Shown piece by piece: positions 3,658 through 60,029 of a stretch of 64,000 bases of DNA (the first letter of the stretch is position 1; the number at the start of each line of letters is the position of its first letter). Where the stretch lies: the IMG/VR virus record IMGVR_UViG_3300020195_000009, positions 222,006 to 286,005 of that record; one strand, 5' to 3'. Below the pieces are notes generated by a model. It had not been told where the DNA came from. It worked only from the letters and a program-made list of their open reading frames with translations, and did no database searches. Made by a program: the position numbers and the translations under genes.

Positions 3658-4062
3658 ATGGCTGATCAAGGAGCTTCTCAGGCAAGGAGCAACGAGACGC
3701 TCAATCGCGCCTCCTCGTTTCAGGGGCGAGATGGGGCGGCTGCGGTCAGTCGTTCGGTAACGTCATCCGCGAACTATCTGGGTCAAGATCGACGCTCGGT
3801 GGAGTCAACCGTAGTAGCAGTCGGGTCAACTTTCGATGGTGCGGACCGCGCTGCTGCAAGACGTTCAAGTGCTGGCGTGCCTCGTGGGACAAGAGACGGT
3901 CTTGTTCGGACGTACGTGCTCCGAAGGTTCCTCGGTTGGAATGGAGGCACGCCCGTTCGTTGGGTCAGTGCTACGGACACACCCCCACAACCAGGACTCA
4001 CCAACATCACTATCGAAGACGAGGCTCTGGTGCGCTTTCCGGTAGGGGGACGGGTTCGATGA
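3658..4062 (+). CDS. small structural-module protein, paralog of 5600..5884
   Basis: Identical N-terminus MADQGASQAR and shared LGW.G.TPVRW.S...LTNIT.EDE. Confidence 0.6.
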   Translation: MADQGASQARSNETLNRASSFQGRDGAAAVSRSVTSSANYLGQDRRSVESTVVAVGSTFDGADRAAARRSSAGVPRGTRDGLVRTYVLRRFLGWNGGTPVRWVSATDTPPQPGLTNITIEDEALVRFPVGGRVR

Positions 4063-17649: not shown

Positions 17650-17880
17650 GATACGCTCGAACCTGGTCTTGTAGGGCTCGGGTGGGGGTGGCACAAAGTA
17701 GACGTAACCTCGACGGGGGCCGCCATTCGGCTCTCGTGCGACAGCTCCAGTGTTGTTGAAGGCGCACAAGGTCGAAGCGACCGATGAGGTCTTGGCTTGA
17801 AGAGCGTGTGATATTTCCGTAGCGCTCTTGCCAGGGTTCCCCCGGACGTAGTTCAAGATCCTGTCTTTGAGCATCTCCAT
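17431..17880 (-). CDS. winged-helix protein carrying KTRFERI; tail runs antisense into the ARH gene
   Basis: ILNYVRGNPGKSATEIS..GYVYF wHTH-like pattern; ATG abuts the tRNA 3' end. Confidence 0.55.
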   Translation of the reverse strand: MEMLKDRILNYVRGNPGKSATEISHALQAKTSSVASTLCAFNNTGAVAREPNGGPRRGYVYFVPPPPEPYKTRFERILAEPDGAASRAASDLQLKPVEVVEVLQTLPPSDGDSIQPVVGSRKRPRNGGRRVSVSASPNRGLNRLLKGLG

Positions 17881-17957
17881 GGTGGTCCCGACGGGATTTG
17901 AACCCGCACCCCGCGAATTTAGAATTCGCTGCTTCAAACCATTTGAGCTTCAGGACC
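17880..17957 (-). tRNA. amber suppressor tRNA (anticodon CUA)
   Basis: Acceptor GGTCCTG/CGGGACC, anticodon arm GCGAA-TT[CTA]AA-TTCGC, T arm GCGGG-TTCAAAT-CCCGT, ends ACCA; atypical A8 and D arm. Confidence 0.8.
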
Positions 17958-19070: not shown

Positions 19071-19103
19071 ACAGATTCTCCACAGCCTGTGGATAGAACG
19101 GGG

Positions 19104-19176
19104 CGCTCCCGGCAGGACTTGAACCTGCGACGTACGGATTTAGAAACCGATGTTCTGCCGACTGAACTACGGGAGC
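19104..19176 (-). tRNA. amber suppressor tRNA (anticodon CUA)
   Basis: GCTCCCG/CGGGAGC acceptor, GTTC/GAAC D stem, loop TT[CTA]AA at canonical spacing (anticodon stem has two T-T mismatches), T arm GCAGG-TTCAAGT-CCTGC, G73, no encoded CCA. Confidence 0.8.
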
Positions 19177-19182
19177 ACACAT

Positions 19183-49730: not shown

Positions 49731-50172
49731 ATGAACCCCGCCGACCTCGTCCAGACCCAAGTTCTCCATCTGACCGTCTCCGAAGCTGAGAACCTCCTTC
49801 GTCGGGTCCGCAACTGCCGGACCTTCATAACATATGGGATCGAGGTCTACACGGTGACGGCGTCCAAGCAGGCCGTCATCAACCCGGTGACCGGCGAAGT
49901 GACGGAAGAGGATGGCGTCAACGTCATGGTCCGAGCTGAGACCGACATGCAGGCTGGCATCGGCAAGGGCTTCCTCTTCGCCGTCTACGAAGGGATCGGC
50001 AAGTGAAAGCGATTCACTACGGCGTCCCCGGAACCAAGCAGGACGGAGCGGCCCTCGTCCCCTACTGCGAGAACGGCTACGCCGCCTTCCAGCGGAACGC
50101 CCTCGTCATCATGAACACCATCCCAGCCATGGTCGACTGCAAACACTGCCTCGCCGGCATGAAGAGGGCCGC

Positions 50173-50448
50173 ATGAAATTCAAGACAGGACAGATCGTCG
50201 GTACCCCCGGAGCTACCGAGACCTTCGAGGTCCCCTTCATGGCTCGCTGCCTCGCCCGGCACGTGGAAGGCGATTGGGGTGATGTCGATACCCACGACAA
50301 GGCCGCCAACGAAGACGCCCTCAAAGACGGCTCCCGCCTCATGAGCGTCTACAAATCCGAGGGGAAGACCCTATGGATCATCACCGAGGCCGCCGATGAT
50401 ACCGGGGACCGCTCTGCTACCACTTTCCTCTTGCCGGAAGATTACTGA
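50173..50448 (+). CDS. conserved plasmid/phage-associated protein
   Basis: RH..GDWG..D..AN..AL..G.RL.S.Y..WIITE..RS.TT.LLP.DY. Confidence 0.7.
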   Translation: MKFKTGQIVGTPGATETFEVPFMARCLARHVEGDWGDVDTHDKAANEDALKDGSRLMSVYKSEGKTLWIITEAADDTGDRSATTFLLPEDY

Positions 50449-51247
50449 GCCATGAAGATCGAATTCAAATGCCCCAAGTGTGGAGCACTGCCCAACGAGC
50501 ACGGGAAAGGCGGGGGGCTGAAGTGCAACGAGCGCCGCCACGAGTCCTGCATGGGCTTCATCTGCGACTGCAATGACGATACGGGGGAAACCCACGGTGA
50601 GTCCTTCGAGGACCCGTGCCCCGAGGCCAACTGCTACCACTGTGGATGGGGTGGCGTCTTCCCGGTCAAACCCAAAGGCCTTCAGGCGTGGGAGAAGAAA
50701 GCGCTCGATGCCGGGTGGACCATGTCTGAGACACGCAAGAAGGAGCTTGGGTTATGAAGCGTCCCACAACTAACGGACTCAGCGGTTCACTCGTCACGAC
50801 CCCACGAGCCTCGATGATGATGCAGCTCCTCGGATCTGGAGCTATCCAGGGCTCCGTGGCTCTGACCCGAGACGAGTTCACTGCGGTCAAGAAGCTCTAC
50901 GGTTACAAGGCCGAGAAGCCCAACAAGAAACCGGAGCCCCCCAAGGCTCCCGAGCGCTCCGACTTCGCAGACATCTGGAAGTACGATGAGGCTGTCAAAG
51001 CTCACGAGCGGGCTCTCAAGGCCCACGCCAACTGGAAAGACCCCAAGCCGCTCATGCAAGCGGGGGCTGACCGAAACGCCATCCGTCATGCCGAAGCCGA
51101 CGGACTCCGACTCCTCGCTTGGATCTCCAAGTTCGTTCCGGCCGGAGAGGACCCTATGAGGACCCTCATCCGAGCCACAGCCGATGCCGGCTGGGACGTA
51201 GACCACGAGGACATCGCGTGGGCTGACGACGAAGAGTTGGAGGACGC

Positions 51248-51946
51248 TTGATCCGCTGGCTCATCAACGAGGTCTCCGAGAAGGTCAACCTCCCCAAGGT
51301 CTACCGGGACCTCAAAGCCCTAGGGAAGAAACACGGAAGACGGTTCTTCTGGGTAGCTCTCATCTGGGAGCTTATCGAAGACGTAGTGTTCCCGTTCCTC
51401 TCCTGGCTCCTTGGGGTCCCCGAACTCATCCCCGTCTTCCTTGTCCTTCACTTCGAGCCCATCGTCTACCCGGCGTTCTTCTGGGGTTTCAGGATGTGGG
51501 ACCGAGCCAAGGGCCGAGAACCCTGGGAGCCGGACCGCTCCGCTCAATCGGCTTACTGGAGATCCTTCGCCAAAGTCCTGACCTTCCAACTCGCAGCTTC
51601 AGGTTGGTTGTCTCGGATGATCCTGTGGAAGCCGTTGGTCGTCTTCGCTGTCCTGACCAGCGCCTTCGGTTTCGTTCACGAGCGCATTTGGCATGACGTC
51701 AACTACGGGATTCTTCCTGATGATTCAGTGGCAGCCAAAAGAACCATCGGGAAGACCGGGACCTACCTGCTCGTCTCGACCATGACCCTCTTTCCGCTTC
51801 TACGTGTCTCAGGGGCGGCCCCCATCTGGAAGCCCCTCTTCCTCGTTCAAGGGGTGGCGGGCCTTCTGTACCTCATCCTCGAAGCCGTGTGGGCTAAGTC
51901 CGCCTGGGGTGTCACCCCTTGCGAACCACCTAAGCCGAAGGCTTAA
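51248..51946 (+). CDS. multi-pass membrane protein
   Basis: Several hydrophobic segments; HERIW motif. Confidence 0.6.
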   Translation: MIRWLINEVSEKVNLPKVYRDLKALGKKHGRRFFWVALIWELIEDVVFPFLSWLLGVPELIPVFLVLHFEPIVYPAFFWGFRMWDRAKGREPWEPDRSAQSAYWRSFAKVLTFQLAASGWLSRMILWKPLVVFAVLTSAFGFVHERIWHDVNYGILPDDSVAAKRTIGKTGTYLLVSTMTLFPLLRVSGAAPIWKPLFLVQGVAGLLYLILEAVWAKSAWGVTPCEPPKPKA

Positions 51947-51987
51947 AAATGGGGGTAGGGCCATTTTTACCTTTCGTATGTAGGTGG

Positions 51988-52023
51988 AGTTGAATCCGAG
52001 AGCCCTCCCGTGTTCCTCCAAAC
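51988..52023 (+). promoter_or_regulatory. class I promoter, leaderless
   Basis: AGTTGAATC-N13-GTGTT-N9-ATG(52024). Confidence 0.75.
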
Positions 52024-52062
52024 ATGAAGACCCAAGCTGCTGCCTTCTTTCATCGGATATCC

Positions 52063-52102
52063 GGGGCGGAAACCCCGTCCTTTAGGGCGGGGAGGAAGCC
52101 CC
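52063..52102 (+). mobile_element. IS200/IS605-family terminal hairpin remnant
   Basis: AAACCCCGTCC-TTTA-GGGCGGGGAG, typical of IS605/IS1341 ends; no tnpA/tnpB nearby. Confidence 0.6.
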
Positions 52103-54096
52103 TCTCTAAGAGCGAGCCCCATGAACGAGTTGGACGAACTACCGAGTCTCCGAATCCTTGCGGTGCAGGTCAAGAAGCATTTTGAGGGGGTGAAGGTGGC
52201 CCGTTCGCTCCCCGACCGCTCCAGCTCGTCCTGGAGAACCTCCCCGTAGACTTCGAGAGCCCTCCGAGCGGCTAGGTCCTTGGCTCTTTTGAGTTTGGCT
52301 TCTGTCACCGAGGACACCTGTTCCAATGGTGGGCTTTGCAGCGCTTGCACCAGGGAGACGGTGGACGTGTCGCCTGGGTTGGGTAGTAGTCCGCGTCGGA
52401 TCATCTCCCACTCAAAAATGTGATACCGAGCTGAGCCCTTTCCGCCCTTCGCAGCGGCCTTCTCGTACGAATCCAAAATCTGCGAATCCGAAGCATGGGC
52501 CGCCCATGTCTTCAGATTCGTTTGACGCGTCGTCACGTGAACGTGCTCCAGCTCTCCAGCGTCTCGTCCCATCTCCAGCCAAGCTTCCCCAGCTCCCCCT
52601 TGTGTGCCTCAGAGAGGTCTTCCGGTCGAGGACCTGTCGCATGAAGTACGTCATGCTGAGCATCGCAGTTCCACGTCACCCCGTCAGGCTTGTACCCGTT
52701 CAAGATAGTGAGCCCTTGGGCTATGTCGTGCTGACTTGCCATCTTGCGCCCCATAGCCAAAAATGAGAGGTTTCCAACCAAACCCACCCCCTCGCTGACA
52801 CCGAGAGTCTAAAGTGACTCACCAAATGAGATCGGAGAGCCAAAAATGAGGGGTTTCCGAGAGCCCTACCTCTTCTTACTCTTTTTCTTCAAAGAGATAC
52901 CGCCCTCTAAGACCCCAGAGCCAAAAATGAGAGGTTTCCGAGCAGGTTCGGCCTCCGCTCGCCTACGACGGACCTCACGGATGAGAGCCAGGACCAGACG
53001 GCCGTTGAGTCGGAGCCCTTCCTTGGACTCTCGAAGACAAGAGATCGGCTTCTTCTAGGTCCCGTGGGTGAGCATCTCCAGTTCTCACGTGGTAAGTCTT
53101 CGGTACCTTCTCAAGGAAGCTTTCTCCTACCTCACCAGGTGAGAGCTTCCTGGCTTCATTCATCACCCCGGCCACAAGAGGCTGCCATGAACGGCCCTCG
53201 CGAAGGACAAGAAGCCCACCCGACGGGCTCATGAGCGTCACTCTGTACTCTTTTGATCCGAAGGGATGGGTCAGCTCCAAGATTCGACCCACCTCGTCTT
53301 CCCAGACTCTCCGGTCAAACGTGTGCCACGACGGAGCGGCGTAGCCGCTCGTCGAGTGAGCGTCTCGGACCCCAGGATACGTCAAGCGCCAAGGCATGGT
53401 CCCTAGTATTCCCCAGGGTTTCGTCCCGACCAATCCAAGTCCATCGTCTGGTCCGCCAAGACCTCGTACCCGAGCCCGGCCCACGAGTGAAGCGTCTCGT
53501 CCCGCAGCCGAAGTTGCTCAGGTCCAGACCCAAACATAACGATGAGCGGCCAGTCTTTCGTAGGAAGACGCCGGACCTTATCGAAGCGGTCCAGACCCGG
53601 AGGGTCTTCTTGCCCTTCCCGAAGCTGTACATGAATCGTCGGGAAGCCCATGCCAGGGAGTACACCGGGGATTACCCCCTTCCCCTCAAAAATGAGCCGG
53701 GCTATGAAATTTAGGTCCGGGCAGGGACAGGGGGTTTAGCTCCTGGGCTCCAAAAATTGACCGGCACCCAAAATTTAAGGTCGGGGCGCTCGGAATCCTC
53801 TCATTTCTTAGGGGTTACCCGTCAAACGGGAGCCTCGCGGGGGTAAGGCTAGGCGCAAGAGCCCTCGTCAGGGGCGTTTGGTCGGAATCCTCTCATTTCT
53901 AGGGCTCGTCAGGTCATTCGTCGGGTGTTACGTCCTATTACCCCTCGGCCGGACCACATGTCCGTGTTAATTCGATACGCCCTTTTTGCCGATTTCCCAT
54001 AGTCAAGGGGAATAATCGAGCGGTTTTTATTTTTACAGGAAATATGTATGCCACCTGACACCCCCTGGTCCTGAGGGGTTTTTGAGGAATCGTGCC

Positions 54097-54132
54097 AGTT
54101 GATTCAGGGCACCCCTGCCGTGTTCTCCAGGG
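54097..54132 (+). promoter_or_regulatory. class I promoter, leaderless, driving the recombinase
   Basis: AGTTGATTC-N14-GTGTT-N8-ATG(54133). Confidence 0.75.
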
Positions 54133-54969
54133 ATGGACCGTGACCTCTCAGGTGCATCGAATGACGCAGAACTCATGCAGCTCTGGTTACAAGGGAGACC
54201 TGAGAGCACCATGAGAGTGTACGAGCCTGTAGCTCAGGCCTTCATGGCCGCTCTCCCCCAAGGCTTGCGAGGGGCAACCGTCAAGGACGTGCTCACCTAC
54301 ATTCAAACACACGTGAAGGGTGAGCCTGCTACCAGGGCTAGGTTGGTGAGCACCATCAAGAGCCTGCTCTCATGGGCCTGGAGGACGGGCTATACAACCG
54401 TCAACGTAGGTAAGGCTATTAGGTGCGTACGGGTGCCCAGTACCCTACACAAGAAGCTGTTAGATGAAGGTCAGATACAAGGGCTATGCCGGGCCGCAAG
54501 CGGCCGTGACCATGCCCTTGTTGTTCTTCTGTACGTGAGCGGTCTTCGTATCAGCGAGGCCTGTGGCCTTCTCGGGTCCGACTTGAGGGGATGTCATGTG
54601 ACGGTCCTTGGTAAGGGCACCAAGACCCGAACCGTCCTGATCCCCCAGGCAGTAGCCGACCTTCTCATGACCCTTACCAAGGGGCACCAGGTTGACCCGA
54701 GTAAGCCGCTCTTCTGTTCCCGGTGGGGGAGGCGCCCCCTGGGCGTCCGGGCCGCTAGGGAGGCTATCTACAAGGCGGCATCAAAGGTCGGCCTGGACGA
54801 CCTGTCGCCTCACTGGCTCCGGCACGCTCATGCGACCCATGCCATGGACCGGGGGGCTCCCCTCCACGTCGTCCAACAGGGCCTTGGTCACGCCTCCGTG
54901 GCAACCACCTCGAAGTACCTCCACGTGAAGCCGAGCGTAGGCGCTTCGCAGTGGCTCGCTCCGGTGTAG
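54133..54969 (+). CDS. XerC/D-like tyrosine recombinase
   Basis: SGLRISE, GKGTKTR, PHWLRH, LGHASVATTSKYLH. Confidence 0.92.
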   Translation: MDRDLSGASNDAELMQLWLQGRPESTMRVYEPVAQAFMAALPQGLRGATVKDVLTYIQTHVKGEPATRARLVSTIKSLLSWAWRTGYTTVNVGKAIRCVRVPSTLHKKLLDEGQIQGLCRAASGRDHALVVLLYVSGLRISEACGLLGSDLRGCHVTVLGKGTKTRTVLIPQAVADLLMTLTKGHQVDPSKPLFCSRWGRRPLGVRAAREAIYKAASKVGLDDLSPHWLRHAHATHAMDRGAPLHVVQQGLGHASVATTSKYLHVKPSVGASQWLAPV

Positions 54970-54993
54970 AGTAGGTAGCTCCTTCGGGAGTAA

Positions 54994-55050
54994 GAAGCCC
55001 GCTGTCGTGACCTTGCCCCCCCGAGTGTCCGCAGCGGGCTTCGCTATTTT
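54994..55050 (+). terminator. terminator-like stem (possibly part of a small RNA)
   Basis: GAAGCCCGCTG/CAGCGGGCTTC followed by TATTTT. Confidence 0.55.
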
Positions 55051-55052
55051 CG

Positions 55053-55087
55053 AGTTGAATCCCGAGCGTCTCAGGTGTTCCTGAAAC
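55053..55087 (+). promoter_or_regulatory. class I promoter firing into the 158-nt element
   Basis: AGTTGAATC-N13-GTGTT-N8-GAAGCGGA(55088). Confidence 0.75.
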
Positions 55088-55245
55088 GAAGCGGACGGTA
55101 GGAAAGCTCTCAGAGAGGCTTGACCGGACGGAGTAGGGACGCTTCGGGGAGATCCGTCCGGGACGCCGGATTCTGAACGGATCTCCCCGAAGCCCGGACT
55201 ACTTCGTCTGGGTCTCTCCCGTTTCGGGAGGGGGCCATCCGCTTC
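55088..55245. ncRNA. 158-nt highly paired four-way-junction element, predicted sense and antisense RNAs
   Basis: Terminal IR GAAGCGGA(C/T)GG; perfect 17-bp helix 55141-57/55177-93; 13-bp helix 55124-36/55199-211. Confidence 0.75.
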
Positions 55246-55280
55246 TTCTGGTAAACACAGAGCTTCGCTCGGAATCAACC
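55246..55280 (-). promoter_or_regulatory. class I promoter firing into the same element from the other end
   Basis: GGTTGATTC-N13-GTGTT-N8-GAAGCGGA(55245). Confidence 0.75.
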
Positions 55281-55434
55281 CAGAAATGAGAGAAATTCGA
55301 GCGTAGCGAGCCTGCCCCAAAGGGTGCCCTTCCTGTAGGGCGCGAAGCTCGAAAACCTCTCATTTCCAGGGCCTTTCCCACGTGGTAGCTAGGCAACCGA
55401 AAACGTGACTTTTCGGATCTAGTGCCCAAAAAGG

Positions 55435-55469
55435 GGTTGAATCCGAGCGTCCTCGGGTGTTCCTAGATC
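55435..55469 (+). promoter_or_regulatory. class I promoter, leaderless
   Basis: GGTTGAATC-N13-GTGTT-N8-ATG(55470). Confidence 0.75.
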
Positions 55470-55550
55470 ATGAGCAAGACCCGATTCGACCGGATTCTGG
55501 CCCTCATCGGGCTACCGCCCCAGAACCTCCGAACCAAGGAGGGGCGTAGG
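55470..55550 (+). CDS. 26-aa microprotein MSKTRFDRILAPHRATAPEPPNQGGA
   Basis: ATG at +1 of a class I promoter; carries the shared motif; below the ORF-track cutoff. Confidence 0.55.
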
Positions 55551-56015
55551 CTCAAGGCGTGGTCCGTTCCGCAAGGCCTTCCTGGCCATCAAGATCGCTG
55601 ACGCCTACGACGCTGCCATGGTTGCCCTCGGGGACGACCGACGAGCCTGGCGGGGCTCCAACTGAGAGCCAGAAATGAGAGGTTTCCGTTGAACCGTGGG
55701 TCTCTTTTGAGGTACCCCAAATTATCTTCTCTCTTCGGAAAGAAATCAGTTGAAACAAGAGGCCGGCGAAGACAAAGCTGTCTGCCTCTACGCCCGTGTG
55801 GAACATGACCTACGAGACCCTCGACGCCCTCCTTGACGAAGGGACCAAGAGCGCCAACGTCATCTCCATCTTCCGCAACGTAAAGAAGGCGGCCTGAGCG
55901 CCAAGGCCCAGGTGAGGCTGGCGAAGCTCCGAGAAGGCTGGGCCTCTTGAGAGACAGAAGAGCCGGGCCTCCTCACGGGGGGTCCGGCTCTTCTGTCTCA
56001 ACGCAGGCTCGGAGC

Positions 56016-56270
56016 CTACACCTTCTGGCTCGCCTTCAGGAGGTCTTTCCAAGAAGACTTCTTGCCTCGGGAGCGAGCGGCGTTCTTGGGCATCTTGTAC
56101 CTTCGGGGCGTGTCCCAAAGCCGGCTATAGCAACGAGGGCATATAGAAGGCTTTGGAAAGGGCTCCTCCGGCTTCGAGCCGTCTTCCTCCAGCTCAAGTC
56201 CTTTCGGCACCCATTCCCCATCGCAACGAAGGCAGCGGTAACCCCAGACCACGATCTGGTGAAGGCCCAT
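56016..56270 (-). CDS. zinc-ribbon protein
   Basis: CLRC..W..CPRC.S..W. Confidence 0.6.
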   Translation of the reverse strand: MGLHQIVVWGYRCLRCDGEWVPKGLELEEDGSKPEEPFPKPSICPRCYSRLWDTPRRYKMPKNAARSRGKKSSWKDLLKASQKV

Positions 56271-56279
56271 CGTTCCCTT

Positions 56280-56717
56280 TCAGGAGGGCTGGGCCGGGTG
56301 GTACTTGGTCTTCGACCGCTCCCCCGTCTTCGTGATCCTCCCCGAAGTGAGGGCCGTCTTGATCAGGTCGCTCAGCTTCGGACCTACTTCACAACCCATC
56401 CGCTTCGCAATCTCAGAGGACGGGATACCCGACGGCTCTGTGACGACCGCTACCAGGGCGTCCAGCTTCTCTTCTGAGCCATTCCCGGAAGGGGACGACT
56501 CAGAACCTTCACGCTCGGCCTTGAAGAAGTACGTCTCTCCACGGCTCAGGATGAGCATGGAGCGACCCTCGACCATGTGAGGGCCCTTTCCAGCCGCATC
56601 GAAGACCTGCTTTGCCAGGGCGCTCCGCTTGATCTTCGTCACCTCCAAGGCCTTCTCGACCTTCTCCAGGAGCTTGTTCTGCTCCACCCACGCAGCAATC
56701 AACTTGTCCTTGTCCAT
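56280..56717 (-). CDS. protein with C-terminal winged-helix domain
   Basis: GIPSSEIA..L..G.ITKTGERSKTKY. Confidence 0.6.
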   Translation of the reverse strand: MDKDKLIAAWVEQNKLLEKVEKALEVTKIKRSALAKQVFDAAGKGPHMVEGRSMLILSRGETYFFKAEREGSESSPSGNGSEEKLDALVAVVTEPSGIPSSEIAKRMGCEVGPKLSDLIKTALTSGRITKTGERSKTKYHPAQPS

Positions 56718-58381
56718 CGTTTGTTCGACCTCGCTTCCATCGCCTACCTACACCAACCATAAGAACTCGGGGGTTGTCTTTCGTCGGGGTCAGAAAGACA
56801 CCCGGAATCAAGCCTCGTGCCGGGAAATTCAAATGAAGAACTGGCCCCCTTCTTGACGGGCCTCTTGGTACGGCTCTTGATTCAATAACTGTTTCAAGGA
56901 AATGACCAAACGTTCATGAACGCGCATTTGGTTTACGGGGGTCTGAGGGTCATTCCAGTGGGGACGGATCCTACCCTTCTCTTAGCCCTTCGGGCTGTTG
57001 TCTGGGTGAAAAACTCAGGTGTTGTCTGGGTGAAACCAAGGCATAACCCAGGTGCCGCCCACCCTTCAAGATGATCAGAGATGAACTTCTTGTATTCGGG
57101 TTGACGCTTCCGATCGCCGAAGACGTCGTCGGGTGGAACTTGTTTTTCCTTTTGCCAAGTCTTGGATGCCTCTTGCCAACTGGGGTATTTAGCCAGGTAT
57201 TTCACGTATTCGTTCCTTGGCTGCTGATCCTCCTTGGCGAACGCGGCAAGTTTTGTTGAGATAGCGTCGTCGTGCTCAAGCAAACGACGAACGACGTTGC
57301 GAATACCCGCCGGCCGGCGTGTTTGCTGGCACGCTTCTGGATGGGTTCTCTCGATGGTTCGGTTTGCCCAAGCGAGCTTCTCTGAGGCGGGCATCCTTCC
57401 TGTCTCATGGTGGCACTCAGAGCAGCGTAGGAAGGCTTCTGCTTCTCTCTCGGGGGTCTTCATGGTCAGGACTTGGGTGAGCACTCCAGGGCGCTTGTAC
57501 AGGGTGGGCCGATTAGCTCAAACGGGTAGGTGACTTTGGGGTTGGCCATGGGCGTGTTCTTTCTTCTTCGGCTGTGTTGCCTCGTTCGCCTGTGGACTTG
57601 GTTGGTTTCACCTATCCTCGGGGGCCACGGGGGATACGACCGGCGCCGGTTCGTCCTGGGTGGAGCGTCGAAGAGCGAGGCCCGCTCGCTTCCGTTCCTT
57701 CGGTTGTCGAGGTTATGGTGTCGGGAGCCGAAGCCGAAGTGGCCAGTGTTCCAGAGGGGGTTGAAGAGGTCGTGGAGCTTGCGAGCGTGAGCGAGGATGA
57801 GTTTCGTACGGATCTCGTTTCCCATGGGGTCGTAGGGTGTGAGGTCGCTCTCGCGGGCTACATCACGGGTGGGTGCTGCATTCGAGCTTCTCGACGGTTG
57901 GTGGAGGGCAGCAATCGCGGGCGTTGTCGTCGAAGTCGTCGGGTGCGTCTTTGGGCTTGGGGGTTGAGGGCTTCAGGAAAGAGAGCGGGTCGTCATCACC
58001 ATCGGTGGGCTCCGTCACGGTACGGATCTACACCCTCGTGTCTGGTCGGTGTCACTGTTACGCATGGAGCCGAACCTTCGAGGGTTGTTCAAGTGTGGCG
58101 GTCATAACGGGTCAGTCGCCTACGAGAAGGAACCTGGGCAGCCTTGCTACATCATCGGATCCGAGGGGGAGAACATCCTCATGGTTGAGAAGCCGTCTCG
58201 GGCGTCGTACCACCTCTTTACGGGCCTTGTCACTTCGGGGACGAGCCGGTCATCATCCTCGGTGTGTGTCAGGGGGAGTTTCTTGGCGAAGTAGCGGAGG
58301 TTTCGTACACGGTGAATGGGGTGGGGGTCTGGTCGTGTGCGCTTTCGGTTTTGAACCCACGTGGAGTGTTGGCGCTACGGG

Positions 58382-59094
58382 TCACGTAGGGCGACCTTTC
58401 GCTTCTCGGTATAGTACCGGACGCACCTTTTCTCCAGGCGAGCGAAGTAGGCAGCCCAATACGATCGCATCCTTGAAGTCATCGACGGGATTTCCCATGG
58501 TCTTCTCCCCCTCGGCGAGTCGCATGACCGCCTTTCCGTAGAGCCCCGACAACGACAGGGTGCGTTGCATCCGGTACTTGGCCGAGACCTTCATGATCTT
58601 CATGGCGGCGCCCGAGCCTCCCTCACGCTCGTTCGTCTTACCGTAATCGGTCACGACTTCCAGGTCGTCGAGCTTCTTCTTCCGGTCTGCGTTATCGCGT
58701 TGGTCGCGGTTGCGCGGATCCGCGAGGTCCGCCACGCCGGCCCAAGGCTCGTTCCACACTTCGGCAGCCGCGCCGTTGATGTAGTTGAGGTGGATGTAGT
58801 GACCAAACTCGTGGAGCACGGTCTCACCCGACCCTGACTCAACGAACCTCCCCGCGGTTCGTTGAGGTAGTCGAGGCCGGAGAGAACGCTTCGGCACTTC
58901 TCATCGGAGAGGTGCTGCTTGTTCTCGACCTTGATGCCCTCGTAGCTGAAGTGCTCCGGGGCAGTGCTATCGACAATCTCCTGCAAAGTCCGCTTGTACT
59001 GCTGGATGACGTCGGACAAGGCGTCTTCCGGGGCCGCGTCCTTCTCCTTCGACAGCTTTGAGAGCGCCCTTCGGACCGCCAGAAACTTGGCCAC
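58382..59094 (-). pseudogene. fragmented HExxH metallopeptidase-like gene
   Basis: VLHEFGHYIH and VTDYGKTNERE in one frame; upstream part in another; abrupt junctions. Confidence 0.5.
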
Positions 59095-60029
59095 CTGGTT
59101 CGGGGAGTGACATGACGACGTTGCGCGACTTCCAGGATAGCCTCTGCTGCGACGAACTACTGGGAAGGCGCGACCGCCGACCTCAAGAAGTTCAACTCGC
59201 TGTACGCTCCTGTCGAGAAGAAGCCGGGCGACAAGGCGACGCTCGTGAAGTGTGCGGTCTGGGCGACCAAGTGCCTCACGCCGGAGCTAGACGCCTTTCG
59301 CGTCGTCGTTCGGAAAGAGGTTGCCTGCCTTGGCGAGGACCCTCTTCTTCAATTCAGCACGAAGGCCAGGCGCCTGGTTGAAATGCTGAATCGTACCGTC
59401 AAGAGCGTAATGCTCCATGCCGGGCTTGATACGATGGACGCGATCCACCGTGAACTTGACCATCCGATCCCAGAGCGCCCCTTCGAGGGTCTTCGGGTCG
59501 ATGAGGGTGATGCCCGGTCCGAAGAACATGTTTTCGGATCCTGAGAGCTTCTTGACGGTGTCCTTCGCGGCCGACGTCGGGCTCTTGCCCTTCATCATCG
59601 TGCGCACCGCGTACTCGACGACCGTGTCGTGCGTGGAGCGGTCGGTGCGGGACGTCGCCTTTGCGGCTTCGCTGTCGGCACTCTCGGCCGAGGCGGTACG
59701 CGCAACGAACGTCGGGCCCTTGGCCGCCAGAACGACCCGCTCGACGATGAGGGCATCTTGAAACTCTCGCACGGCGTCCGACATGGCAAAGACCTCGTTG
59801 GGTTTACAACGAGGTCTGCCTATCAAAGGAGTCTCAGGCGCTCTTACCTGGGCTTTTAGGGCCCCGTAACTTCACGCCTTCTTCTTCTTGGGCTCTTTCA
59901 CCTCGGCCGCCGGAGTCACCCACGCCCGACTTCAAGTGCGTGGAAATGTACACTTTCCCGTAAAGCACCTGCGGAAAGGTCGAGCATCACGATTGTCAGA
60001 AACGACACCACCCCATTCGCGAACCCGTC

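What the first reader, a model, noticed from the sequence alone, without database searches (positions are those of the whole stretch)
52757..55688. Iteron-like repeat field surrounding the recombinase and an AT-rich gap
Seen: at least eight copies of AAATGAGAGGWTTCCG in both orientations, which I found only within about 3 kb around the recombinase, with an AT-rich tract near 53965-54050. Inference: binding sites for an initiator, partition protein or recombination accessory factor, marking an origin or resolution locus of a phage-plasmid.
Basis: partly seen in the sequence, partly recalled or inferred. Interest (0 to 1): 0.6.

Follow-up and report, generated by a model that had tools for sequence, protein, structure and literature searches.

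The report
Recombinase-locus protein-binding repeats, not iterons
A 23-base motif repeated eight times around the only tyrosine recombinase gene of a huge phage is real and conserved in related phages, and it looks like the binding-site set of a control region for that recombinase locus rather than a replication origin or plasmid partition site.

Summary
The motif CCARAAATGAGAGGWTTCCGAGC has eight copies between 52757 and 55691. There is no comparable copy elsewhere in the 286-kb phage contig. The AT-rich tract is also real.

The motif belongs to a conserved, largely non-coding locus found in relatives whose recombinase is 63-93% identical. The locus runs in this order:
- a divergently transcribed ORFan gene, here called A2;
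- motif copies;
- a conserved AT-rich element with a dif/lox-like quasi-palindrome;
- a XerD-like recombinase;
- a terminator;
- a ~160-nt palindromic module between convergent promoters;
- further motif copies.

Distant relatives carry a cognate motif (CCTGGCCTTTCYRGG) at the same places. Several copies sit directly upstream of promoter -35 boxes.

Nothing supports an origin or partition site:
- copy spacing is 81-92 bp and both orientations occur;
- no Rep, ParA or ParB gene was found;
- no DnaA box was found;
- there is no clean GC-skew switch.

Segments flanked by inverted motif copies are never inverted among seven relatives, which argues against shufflon-type crossover sites. The palindromic module does differ in orientation among relatives.

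My best reading is operator or accessory sites for one locus-specific protein, possibly the recombinase itself. The binder is not identified, and a test with sequencing reads could not be run.

The parts
52757..52779 (+). Motif copy M1 (CCAAAAATGAGAGGTTTCCAACC). It lies 14 nt upstream of the start of the small minus-strand gene 52533-52742.
   Evidence: conserved in L011 at 2711
52840..52862 (+). Motif copy M2
52921..52943 (+). Motif copy M3. In relative L011 the A2 reading frame runs through the equivalent copy.
53788..53810 (-). Motif copy M4, oriented towards the recombinase gene
53880..53902 (-). Motif copy M5, about 240 bp upstream of the recombinase start. A cognate motif sits at the same offset in L011 and L012.
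55280..55302 (+). Motif copy M6 (degenerate). It directly abuts the -35 box of the minus-strand promoter that fires into the palindromic module.
55347..55369 (-). Motif copy M7, about 70 nt upstream of the promoter at 55434
55669..55691 (+). Motif copy M8, just after the stop of the broken small gene. The equivalent copy in L011 (6231) has the opposite orientation.
53685..53699 (-). Motif-like half site (CGGCTCATTTTTGAG) over the -35 region of the leftward A1/A2 promoter. Relatives L016, L049 and L050 carry a full cognate motif at this place.
52975..53651 (-). A1 (53403-53651, 82 aa) and A2 (52975-53398, or to the GTG at 53484; frameshifted here). A2 is an ORFan family always found next to this recombinase and transcribed divergently from it.
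53965..54090 (+). Conserved AT-rich non-coding element with three sequence blocks shared with relatives down to 63% recombinase identity. It contains the quasi-palindrome ATTTTTACAGGAAATAT within the searched 23-mer at 54030-54052, which is single-copy in the record. A hairpin at 54062-54078 is followed by a T run.
54096..54969 (+). Leaderless promoter (54096-54132) and the tyrosine recombinase gene (54133-54969, 278 aa). The catalytic residues R139, K, H227-x-x-R230, H253 and Y262 are present.
54994..55043 (+). Terminator-like hairpin with a T run after the recombinase gene
   Evidence: read from the sequence; the same hairpin is in L011, L012 and L016
55052..55279 (.). Convergent promoters (55052+ and about 55279-) around a ~160-nt palindromic module (55086-55247). 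The module folds as a closing stem, two side hairpins and a long central hairpin. Its orientation differs among relatives.
55434..55665 (+). Promoter and a small gene broken by an internal deletion. The intact 110-aa version is at L011 5897-6229.
56280..56717 (-). 145-aa protein with a probable C-terminal winged helix. It is a candidate binder but is restricted to the window and L011.

Best explanation
The repeats are recognition sites for one sequence-specific DNA-binding protein of the phage. Together they form the control region of a conserved recombinase locus.

The locus order is: A2 gene, motif copies, AT-rich core-like element, XerD-like recombinase, palindromic RNA module, more motif copies.

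Proposed mechanism, inferred rather than shown:
- The protein recognises the nearly invariant GAAATGAGAGG.
- It occupies positions directly upstream of, or between, the locus's promoters. These are the leftward A1/A2 promoter, the promoters converging on the palindromic module, the promoter of the small gene at 55470, and the region upstream of the recombinase.
- By cooperative binding or looping between the clusters, it sets the transcription of the recombinase, A2 and the module RNAs.

The binder may be the recombinase itself. That would give autoregulation plus accessory sites, as in TnpI of Tn4430 and Tn5401. It may instead be a small locus protein such as A2 or the 145-aa winged-helix protein.

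Shown: the copies, their restriction to the locus, their conservation and positions in relatives, and their adjacency to promoters.

Inferred: that a protein binds them, which protein it is, and the effect on transcription or recombination.
For: Restriction to the locus: eight copies lie only within 3 kb of a 286-kb record.

Conservation in a close relative: positions and orientations of M1-M5 are kept in L011, which is about 90% identical in DNA.

Cognate motif in distant relatives: relatives at 63-71% recombinase identity carry CCTGGC[AC][CT]TTCYRGG in the same architecture. That is one copy at the leftward promoter, 2-3 direct copies 70-92 bp apart upstream of the AT-rich element, and an inverted copy after the palindromic module.

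Absence together: relatives lacking the motif also lack the AT-rich element and the module (L018, L020, L051; L052 gives only a weak match to the AT-rich element, displaced and on the opposite strand).

Adjacency to promoters: the motif or a motif-like half abuts the -35 box, in the same orientation relative to transcription, at three places:
- the leftward promoter in all seven loci;
- the right convergent promoter (window, L011, L012, L016);
- the left convergent promoter in L011.

Shape of conservation: it has the form of a recognition core with looser flanks.

Possible link to the recombinase: all variants share YAG(G)AAA(T/G) with the conserved CAGGAAAT of the core-like element. This is consistent with the recombinase as binder but is weak evidence.
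Against: - No binding data exist.
- No binder is identified. A2 has no recognisable fold and is frameshifted in the window. The winged-helix protein occurs only in the closest relative.
- Several copies (M2, M3, M4, M7, M8) have no recognisable promoter directly downstream.
- Between the window and L011 the motif copies are no better conserved than the sequence between them; the whole intergenic stretch is 93-96% identical. Selection on the motif itself is therefore not demonstrated.
- M8 differs in orientation between two close relatives.
Confidence: 0.4

Rival explanations
1. Pure recombination accessory sites, with no role in transcription. The recombinase would bind the motif copies as extra subunits that shape the synapse for strand exchange at a dif/lox-like core in the AT-rich element (54030-54052). 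This would resemble DR1/DR2 of the Tn4430 resolution site or the direct repeats of integron attI. The purpose would be to resolve or circularise replicated phage genomes.
For: - The recombinase is an intact XerD/XerA-like enzyme and the only one in the record.
- A single-copy quasi-palindrome lies about 85 bp upstream of it, in the most conserved non-coding block. It is a perfect 11-6-11 palindrome in L016.
- 2-3 direct motif copies lie on one side of it in every relative.
- The motif shares a heptamer with the core's conserved arm.
- TnpI (PMC2847244) shows that a small tyrosine recombinase can use such accessory repeats.
Against: - The copies spread over 3 kb with genes between them, whereas the Tn4430 site spans 116 bp.
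- The core is only a candidate: in most relatives only its inner 5-6 bp are symmetric.
- The heptamer similarity is short.
- Several copies sit in fixed register with -35 boxes, which this model does not explain.
Confidence: 0.25
2. Crossover sites of a shufflon-like multiple-inversion system. The recombinase would exchange strands within the motif and invert the segments between oppositely oriented copies.
For: - Blocks of copies alternate in orientation: (+++)(--)(+)(-)(+).
- The invariant, asymmetric centre TGAGAGG with looser arms resembles an overlap region with arms.
- The locus is rearranged between close relatives.
Against: - The segments bounded by inverted copies (A1-A2; recombinase plus module) have the same orientation in all seven relatives.
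- The rearrangement breakpoints that could be mapped lie in the repeated promoters or in the closing stem of the palindromic module, not in the motif.
- An inversion at M8 would not flip M8 itself, yet M8 is flipped.
- The copies are not in a constant reading frame.
- Duplicate contigs of relatives show no structural variants.
Confidence: 0.1
3. Boundary sequences of shuffled regulatory cassettes. The motif would be part of repeated promoter/terminator cassettes that spread and recombine by homologous recombination, as PeSLs do in T4-type phages, and would have no dedicated binding protein.
For: - The locus is full of a second repeat, a ~40-bp leaderless promoter, in front of small ORFan genes.
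- Gene Y, present after the recombinase gene in L011, is missing there in the window, and the breakpoint lies exactly in two copies of that promoter.
- The motif's right arm (GGTTTCCGAGC) resembles the local -35 region (GGTTGAATCCGAGC).
- PeSLs are described in PMC2839356 and PMC4122927.
Against: - The motif itself is not at the mapped breakpoints.
- A cognate motif keeps its places relative to the recombinase across lineages in which the promoters differ.
- It is confined to one locus, while the promoter class occurs about 20 times over 63 kb.
Confidence: 0.12
4. Iterons of a replication origin, with the AT-rich tract as the unwinding element.
For: - Repeats lie on both sides of a central gene, with an adjacent AT-rich tract of 37% G+C.
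- Convergent promoters nearby could activate an origin.
- There is a local minimum of cumulative GC skew near 52-57 kb.
Against: - Spacing is 81-92 bp rather than about 22 bp, and orientations are mixed.
- The central gene is a tyrosine recombinase. No neighbour matched a Rep or any other replication family; nearly all gave no family match at all.
- No DnaA box was found.
- The skew falls again after 61 kb, so there is no clean switch.
- The AT-rich element is conserved as specific sequence blocks, not merely as AT richness.
Confidence: 0.06
5. Partition (centromere-like) sites of a phage-plasmid.
For: Clustered repeats in both orientations occur in some plasmid centromeres.
Against: - No ParB_N or ParA/CbiA match exists in 286 kb, while the control genomes do match.
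- No plasmid replication genes were seen in the window.
- No related sequence was found in bacterial genome contigs.
- The record is only about 60% complete, so absence is not proof.
Confidence: 0.02

Closest known systems
TnpI / internal resolution site of Tn4430, and Tn5401 (PMC2847244)
   Same: A small tyrosine recombinase of about 280 aa, without an arm-binding domain, has its gene next to a site built from several copies of one recognition motif. The inverted copies form the core and the direct copies are accessory. In Tn5401 (from my own knowledge) the same sites also repress the promoter.
   Different: Here the copies spread over 3 kb instead of 116 bp. The candidate core differs in sequence from the repeats except for a heptamer. 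There is no transposase. The host is a huge phage. Binding by the recombinase is untested.
R64 shufflon (Rci recombinase and sfx sites; from my own knowledge)
   Same: Multiple asymmetric repeats of about 19-23 bp lie in alternating orientation next to a tyrosine recombinase gene.
   Different: No alternative reading frames are joined at the repeats. The segments between the repeats are not seen inverted in any relative. The recombinase is 278 aa and has no extra C-terminal domain.
Phage immunity-region operators (lambda OL/OR; asymmetric C1 operators of P1; from my own knowledge)
   Same: Several copies of one 17-23-bp site are confined to, or concentrated in, a control region. They sit at promoters, in clusters hundreds to thousands of bp apart, which allows looping.
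   Different: No repressor gene is identified. The copies are 81-92 bp apart within clusters rather than adjacent. The conserved partner gene is a recombinase.
Iteron origins of P1, F and R6K (from my own knowledge)
   Same: Repeats flank a central gene and an AT-rich tract lies alongside.
   Different: The central gene is not an initiator. The spacing and orientations do not fit. There are no DnaA boxes.
PeSL regulatory cassettes of T4-type phages (PMC2839356, PMC4122927)
   Same: This applies to the second repeat in the locus: promoter-plus-hairpin units between small ORFan genes that mediate gene gain and loss between close relatives.
   Different: The promoters here are a non-sigma-70-like leaderless class. 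The 23-nt motif under study is not the element at the mapped breakpoints.

Membership tests
Iteron-type replication origin | Tandem direct repeats of 17-22 bp at about one or two helical turns | tested here: not met
   Start-to-start spacings are 83, 81 and 92 bp, and copies lie in both orientations
Iteron-type replication origin | Adjacent gene for a Rep initiator that binds the repeats | tested here: not met
   The central gene is Phage_integrase (5e-30). Among its neighbours, the few weak hits (E > 0.03) are not Rep or Par families
Iteron-type replication origin | AT-rich unwinding element with DnaA boxes | tested here: inconclusive
   An AT-rich tract is present (37% G+C). No DnaA box at up to 1 mismatch lies in 51900-56300. 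The host, and so its DnaA box, is unknown.
Iteron-type replication origin | Strand-composition switch at the site | tested here: inconclusive
   The skew is weak and noisy with only a local minimum, and the record is about 60% complete
Plasmid partition site (parS/parC) | Cognate ParA/ParB-type genes in the replicon | tested here: not met
   No ParB_N or CbiA match in 286 kb, while the control genomes match. The missing 40% of the genome is untested.
Shufflon / multiple-inversion system | Repeats in alternating orientation beside a tyrosine recombinase | tested here: met
   Orientation blocks run +++ / -- / + / - / + around the recombinase gene
Shufflon / multiple-inversion system | Segments between the repeats occur in both orientations | tested here: not met
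   The A1-A2 segment and the recombinase segment have one orientation in all seven relatives. No variants appear in duplicate contigs. Reads could not be tested.
Shufflon / multiple-inversion system | Repeats lie inside reading frames and join alternative gene ends | tested here: not met
   The copies are intergenic or in no constant frame
TnpI/IRS-type resolution site | Inverted pair of recombinase motifs forming a core next to the gene | tested here: inconclusive
   A candidate quasi-palindrome lies within 54030-54052. It is perfect (11-6-11) only in L016, but it sits in the most conserved block
TnpI/IRS-type resolution site | Accessory direct repeats that share the core's recognition sequence and are bound by the recombinase | not testable with these tools
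   Direct copies lie on one side of the candidate core. The shared sequence is only YAG(G)AAA(T/G). Binding needs an experiment.
Lambda-type attP with arm sites | Integrase with an N-terminal arm-binding domain | tested here: not met
   The 278-aa protein has only a weak SAM-like core-binding region (residues 23-85) and the catalytic domain (110-266)
Lambda-type attP with arm sites | Core identical to a host attB, or prophage copies in host genomes | tested here: inconclusive
   Pattern scans for the conserved element found nothing in one genome per species. These were exact-pattern scans only.
Tyrosine recombinase (the gene itself) | Catalytic residues R-K-H-x-x-R-H/W-Y | tested here: met
   Aligned to XerA-like 4a8e (1e-22) and XerD 1a0p. 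GLR139, GKGTK, H227WLR230, GH253 and KY262 are present

The most novel reading that the evidence does not exclude
The locus is a recombinase-operated DNA switch that has not been described. In this reading the XerD-like enzyme, helped by motif-bound subunits or by A2, flips the ~160-bp palindromic module lying between convergent promoters. That would change which structured RNA is made from which promoter, or what is read through into the neighbouring genes. The 23-nt repeats would be the accessory or enhancer sites of this switch, which is conserved in a lineage of huge phages.
Probability: 0.15. Interest if true: 0.75.

Novelty: new variant of a known kind. Interest (0 to 1): 0.5.

Why it matters
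Huge phages carry long stretches of unexplained small genes and non-coding DNA. This work defines a compact conserved module in relatives reaching 128 kb (a more distant 549-kb relative lacks the module):
- a XerD-like recombinase;
- a private partner gene family, A2, with only 19 representatives among 1.84 billion proteins;
- a cognate repeat set;
- a dif/lox-like element;
- a structured palindromic RNA module whose orientation varies among relatives.

If the repeats and the recombinase work together, this would be one of two things. It could be a new small recombinase-and-site system, which would be of use for genome engineering. Or it could be a DNA-inversion switch for RNA expression in phages. 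In either case the locus should not be annotated as an origin or a plasmid maintenance region on the strength of its repeats.

Tried and rejected
- Motif scan of viral contigs: one unrelated chance hit, L009.
- Recombinase scans by peptide patterns: viral contigs gave one unrelated locus at 35% identity (L008). Metagenome contigs gave the window's own contig and relatives at 57% identity or less (44% or less for full-length matches).
- Scans for the conserved AT-rich element: none found in genome contigs (two scans) or viral contigs. The first of these patterns did not match the window itself because of one extra G.
- Rfam on 50000-60000: nothing credible.
- Sigma-70 promoter and terminator scan: at chance level.
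- TAG=Q reading of the region, prompted by two tRNA-CTA genes: no longer frames appeared. Whole-contig stop-codon tests gave no clear sign of recoding. No other genetic code was used.
- A2: no Pfam or PHROG match. A confident model (pLDDT 81.5) has no significant match in the PDB by Foldseek, and its best VIA-align Z score is 6.1.
- RNA structure in the AT-rich element: weak support only.
- Idea that hairpin a of the module co-varies with the motif: it holds in the window (11 of 12 bases) but not in L016, and the hairpin is deleted in L011, so I dropped it.
- Idea that the motif is a promoter of the common leaderless class: there is no conserved -10 box downstream of most copies.
- Helical phasing of the copies: spacings are inconsistent across relatives (70-92 bp).


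Full report
CONTEXT. The window is the last 64 kb of a 286,005-bp IMG/VR virus record (JGI sample 3300020195, Ga0163150_10000022). The record is classed as linear and is about 60% complete by CheckV's estimate. G+C is about 58%. This end of the genome carries accessory genes and many small ORFans. The recognisable genes are an ADP-ribosylglycohydrolase, an amidohydrolase, a UDG, a PcfJ-like protein, an ATP-grasp protein and a metallophosphatase. No replication, partition or structural genes were recognised.

OBSERVATION. The 16-mer of the finding has 7 matches at up to 2 mismatches, against 0.08 expected. It has 9 matches at up to 3 mismatches, against 1.14 expected, and eight of those nine lie in 52761-55688.

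The repeat is really 23 nt long: CCARAAATGAGAGGWTTCCGAGC. A weight-matrix (PWM) scan of the whole record scores the eight copies at 32-38 bits. The next hit (55426, 14.7 bits) lies inside the locus and the best hit elsewhere scores 11.7 bits; both are within the range of shuffled sequence.

The copies start at 52757+, 52840+, 52921+, 53788-, 53880-, 55280+ (degenerate), 55347- and 55669+. GAAATGAGAGG is nearly invariant and the arms are looser.

GENES AND SIGNALS IN THE REGION. A codon-usage score trained on the long ORFs of the record shows that 51947-56280 is poor in convincing genes. The convincing ones are:
- a small minus-strand gene, 52533-52742;
- A1, 53403-53651, minus strand;
- A2, minus strand, ending at 52975;
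- the recombinase, 54133-54969, plus strand;
- the 84-aa and 145-aa genes, 56016-56717, minus strand.

The recombinase matches Pfam Phage_integrase at 5e-30. It aligns over its full length with XerA-like 4a8e and with XerD 1a0p, and the catalytic residues R, K, HxxR, H and Y are all present. It is the only such gene in the record.

A second repeat in the region turned out to be a promoter class: GGTTGA(A/T)TCC-N14/15-CGTGTTCY, followed 6-8 nt later by the ATG, which implies leaderless messages. About 20 copies occur, all between genome positions 214 and 277 kb. Four of them lie in the locus, all on the plus strand:
- 51987;
- 54096, which drives the recombinase;
- 55052, which has no ATG after it;
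- 55434.

RELATIVES. The recombinase has many relatives in large phage contigs. I fetched loci at these levels of protein identity:
- 93%: L011;
- 71%: L012;
- 69%: L050;
- 68%: L049;
- 65%: L013-L015;
- 63%: L016/L017 and L051;
- 59%: L052;
- 56%: L018;
- 52%: L020, from a 549-kb contig.

L011 is collinear with window 52365-54968 at about 90% DNA identity. M1-M5 keep their places and orientations there. The intergenic stretches are 93-96% identical, which is higher than in the coding parts, and the AT-rich element is about 98% identical.

The loci at 63-71% identity, except L051, carry a cognate motif, CCTGGC[AC][CT]TTCYRGG. It shares the part YTTTCYRGG with the window's motif read on the other strand (CCTCTCATTTCYRGG). 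Its copies sit at the same places:
- one copy at the promoter of the leftward gene;
- two or three direct copies 70-92 bp apart, pointing towards the recombinase;
- the conserved AT-rich element, the recombinase and a terminator;
- a ~160-nt palindromic module;
- an inverted copy, sometimes followed by more.

Exact copies number five in L016 and five in L050, where shuffles give none. L018, L020, L051 and L052 lack the motif and the module together; only L052 gives a weak match to the AT-rich element, displaced and on the opposite strand.

A2 is present in every locus that has the motif. An exhaustive profile search of 1.84 billion representative proteins found only 19 members.

WHAT THE MOTIF IS NOT.

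Origin or iterons. The spacing and the mixed orientation do not fit. The central gene is not an initiator. No DnaA box and no GATC cluster are present. GC skew shows no clean switch.

Partition site. The record has no ParB_N or ParA/CbiA match, while the control genomes do match.

Shufflon-type crossover sites. The alternating orientation and the invariant asymmetric centre are suggestive. Four observations argue against this reading:
- The segments bounded by inverted copies have the same orientation in all seven relatives.
- The breakpoints I could map lie elsewhere. Gene Y (L011 5084-5434) is missing after the recombinase gene in the window, and the breakpoint falls exactly within two copies of the promoter repeat. 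This resembles the cassette shuffling by PeSL elements in T4-type phages (PMC2839356).
- M8 is itself flipped between the window and L011, which exchange at M8 cannot produce.
- Duplicate contigs of relatives are collinear.

WHAT IT MOST LIKELY IS. Read as CCTCTCATTTCTGG, the motif or a motif-like half sits directly upstream of the -35 box, pointing with transcription, at three places:
- the leftward A-operon promoter in all seven loci;
- the right convergent promoter of the module (window, L011, L012, L016);
- the left convergent promoter in L011.

M1 overlaps the start region of the small gene at 52742. M7 lies 70 nt upstream of the promoter at 55434.

I therefore read the field as the binding-site set of one locus-specific protein, acting as operators or upstream sites. 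The several clusters would allow cooperative binding or looping.

The recombinase is a serious candidate for the binder. All motif variants share YAG(G)AAA(T/G) with the conserved CAGGAAAT of the quasi-palindrome ATTTTTACAGGAAATAT. That element lies 85 bp upstream of the gene, is single-copy in the record, and is a perfect 11-6-11 palindrome in L016. This arrangement would resemble TnpI with its core and accessory repeats (PMC2847244).

The similarity is short, and I could not test binding. A2 gave a confident model without any recognisable fold. The 145-aa protein has winged-helix look-alikes but occurs only in the window and L011.

THE PALINDROMIC MODULE. Just after the recombinase terminator, two convergent promoters face a ~160-nt segment at 55086-55247. 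Its two ends pair with each other (GAAGCGGACGG with CCGTCCGCTTC). Inside are two side hairpins and a long central hairpin.

In a seven-sequence alignment, 11 of 47 predicted pairs show compensatory double changes. The side hairpins are kept even though their sequence is replaced.

Relative to the recombinase gene, the module lies one way in the window, L016, L049 and L013, and the other way in L011, L012 and L050. L012 and L013 also differ by a nested flip of the central ~34 nt.

The window and L011, whose recombinases are 93% identical, differ in orientation, so the flip has happened repeatedly and recently. I cannot tell whether the recombinase does this or whether recombination between the inverted promoter arms is enough. 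This is the most interesting lead in the locus.

STATE OF THE WINDOW'S COPY. Compared with L011, several genes of the locus are decayed here:
- A2 is frameshifted.
- The 110-aa gene has an internal deletion.
- Gene Y survives only as a remnant at 55764-55898.
- An N-terminal fragment of a Multi_ubiq gene lies inverted at 52123-52214.

The recombinase and the non-coding elements are intact.

LIMITS.
The decisive read-level test was therefore not made, and I did not try to reach the reads another way.
- The host is unknown, and no related sequence was found in bacterial genome contigs.
- The comparisons rest on seven loci in two motif lineages.

VERDICT. The origin, partition and phage-plasmid interpretation is not supported. 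Binding sites connected with the recombinase are plausible.

My estimates for the competing readings are:
- operator or upstream sites of a locus-specific protein: 0.4;
- pure recombination accessory sites: 0.25;
- cassette-boundary repeats without a binder: 0.12;
- crossover sites: 0.1;
- iterons: 0.06;
- partition sites: 0.02.

Noticed in passing
window 55086-55247 (promoters at 55052+ and about 55279-); L011 5533-5685, L012 4064-4228, L050 1941-2105, L049 2405-2566, L016 4955-5113, L013 6935-7097: A ~160-nt palindromic module lies between convergent promoters just after the recombinase gene. It has a conserved four-part fold with compensatory changes. Its orientation relative to the recombinase differs among relatives: window, L016, L049 and L013 one way; L011, L012 and L050 the other. 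L012 and L013 also differ by a nested flip of the central part.
   Followed up: partly
window 9600-, 10443-, 11987+, 12712+, 20818-, 22453+, 32114+, 33053+, 33982+, 34668+, 35210+, 46090+, 48551+, 49694+, 51987+, 54096+, 55052+, 55434+: A promoter class GGTTGA(A/T)TCC-N14/15-CGTGTTCY has the ATG 6-8 nt further on, which implies leaderless messages. About 20 copies occur, nearly all in the last 72 kb of the record, and they do not resemble sigma-70 promoters. Relatives use CGTCCTAG as the second box.
   Followed up: partly
window 53965-54090: A non-coding element is conserved as three sequence blocks down to 63% recombinase identity: GTTAAYTNGATACGC; GTCAAG..GAATAATCGAGCGGTT (IHF-like); and ATTTTTACAGGAAATATGTATGCC. 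A hairpin follows. The last block is a dif/lox-like quasi-palindrome and is a perfect 11-6-11 palindrome in L016 at 3891-3918.
   Followed up: partly
window 17880-17957 (-) and 19101-19177 (-): Two tRNA genes with anticodon CTA, which reads TAG, flank an amidohydrolase gene. ORF statistics give no clear sign that TAG is reassigned in this record.
   Followed up: partly
window 52975-53484 (-); L011 2821-3378, L013 4867-5388, L016 2308-3165, L049 2-655, L050 1-378: A2 is a private protein family always paired divergently with this recombinase. It has 19 representatives among 1.84 billion proteins. A confident model shows a five-stranded sheet plus a helix and then a helical hairpin, with no structural match. 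A1 is a paralogue of its middle part.
   Followed up: yes
window 52123-52214, about 53040-53060, 55470-55665, 55764-55898, 57466-57900: Compared with L011, genes are decayed here. A Multi_ubiq N-terminal fragment is inverted. A2 is frameshifted. The 110-aa gene carries a deletion. Gene Y is a remnant. The Eco29kI-like endonuclease region matches only in pieces.
   Followed up: partly
window 55397-55416; also L011, L012, L016, L050: A small hairpin, CCGAAAACGTGACTTTTCGG, is conserved between the motif copy after the module and the next promoter.
   Followed up: no
L012 4773, L016 5224, L050 2201, L013 7204; window M4 and L016 3500 and 3570: The motif is often followed 8-9 nt later by GTCAAR and then a G+C-rich hairpin. 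This suggests a longer composite element. GTCAA also recurs in the AT-rich element as TTGAC-N13/14-GTCAA.
   Followed up: no
window 56016-56270 (-): An 84-aa protein with CxxC-x27-CxxC and a basic tail looks like a zinc ribbon. It is conserved in L011, L013 and L016 a few kb from the recombinase, and is a possible small DNA-binding regulator.
   Followed up: no
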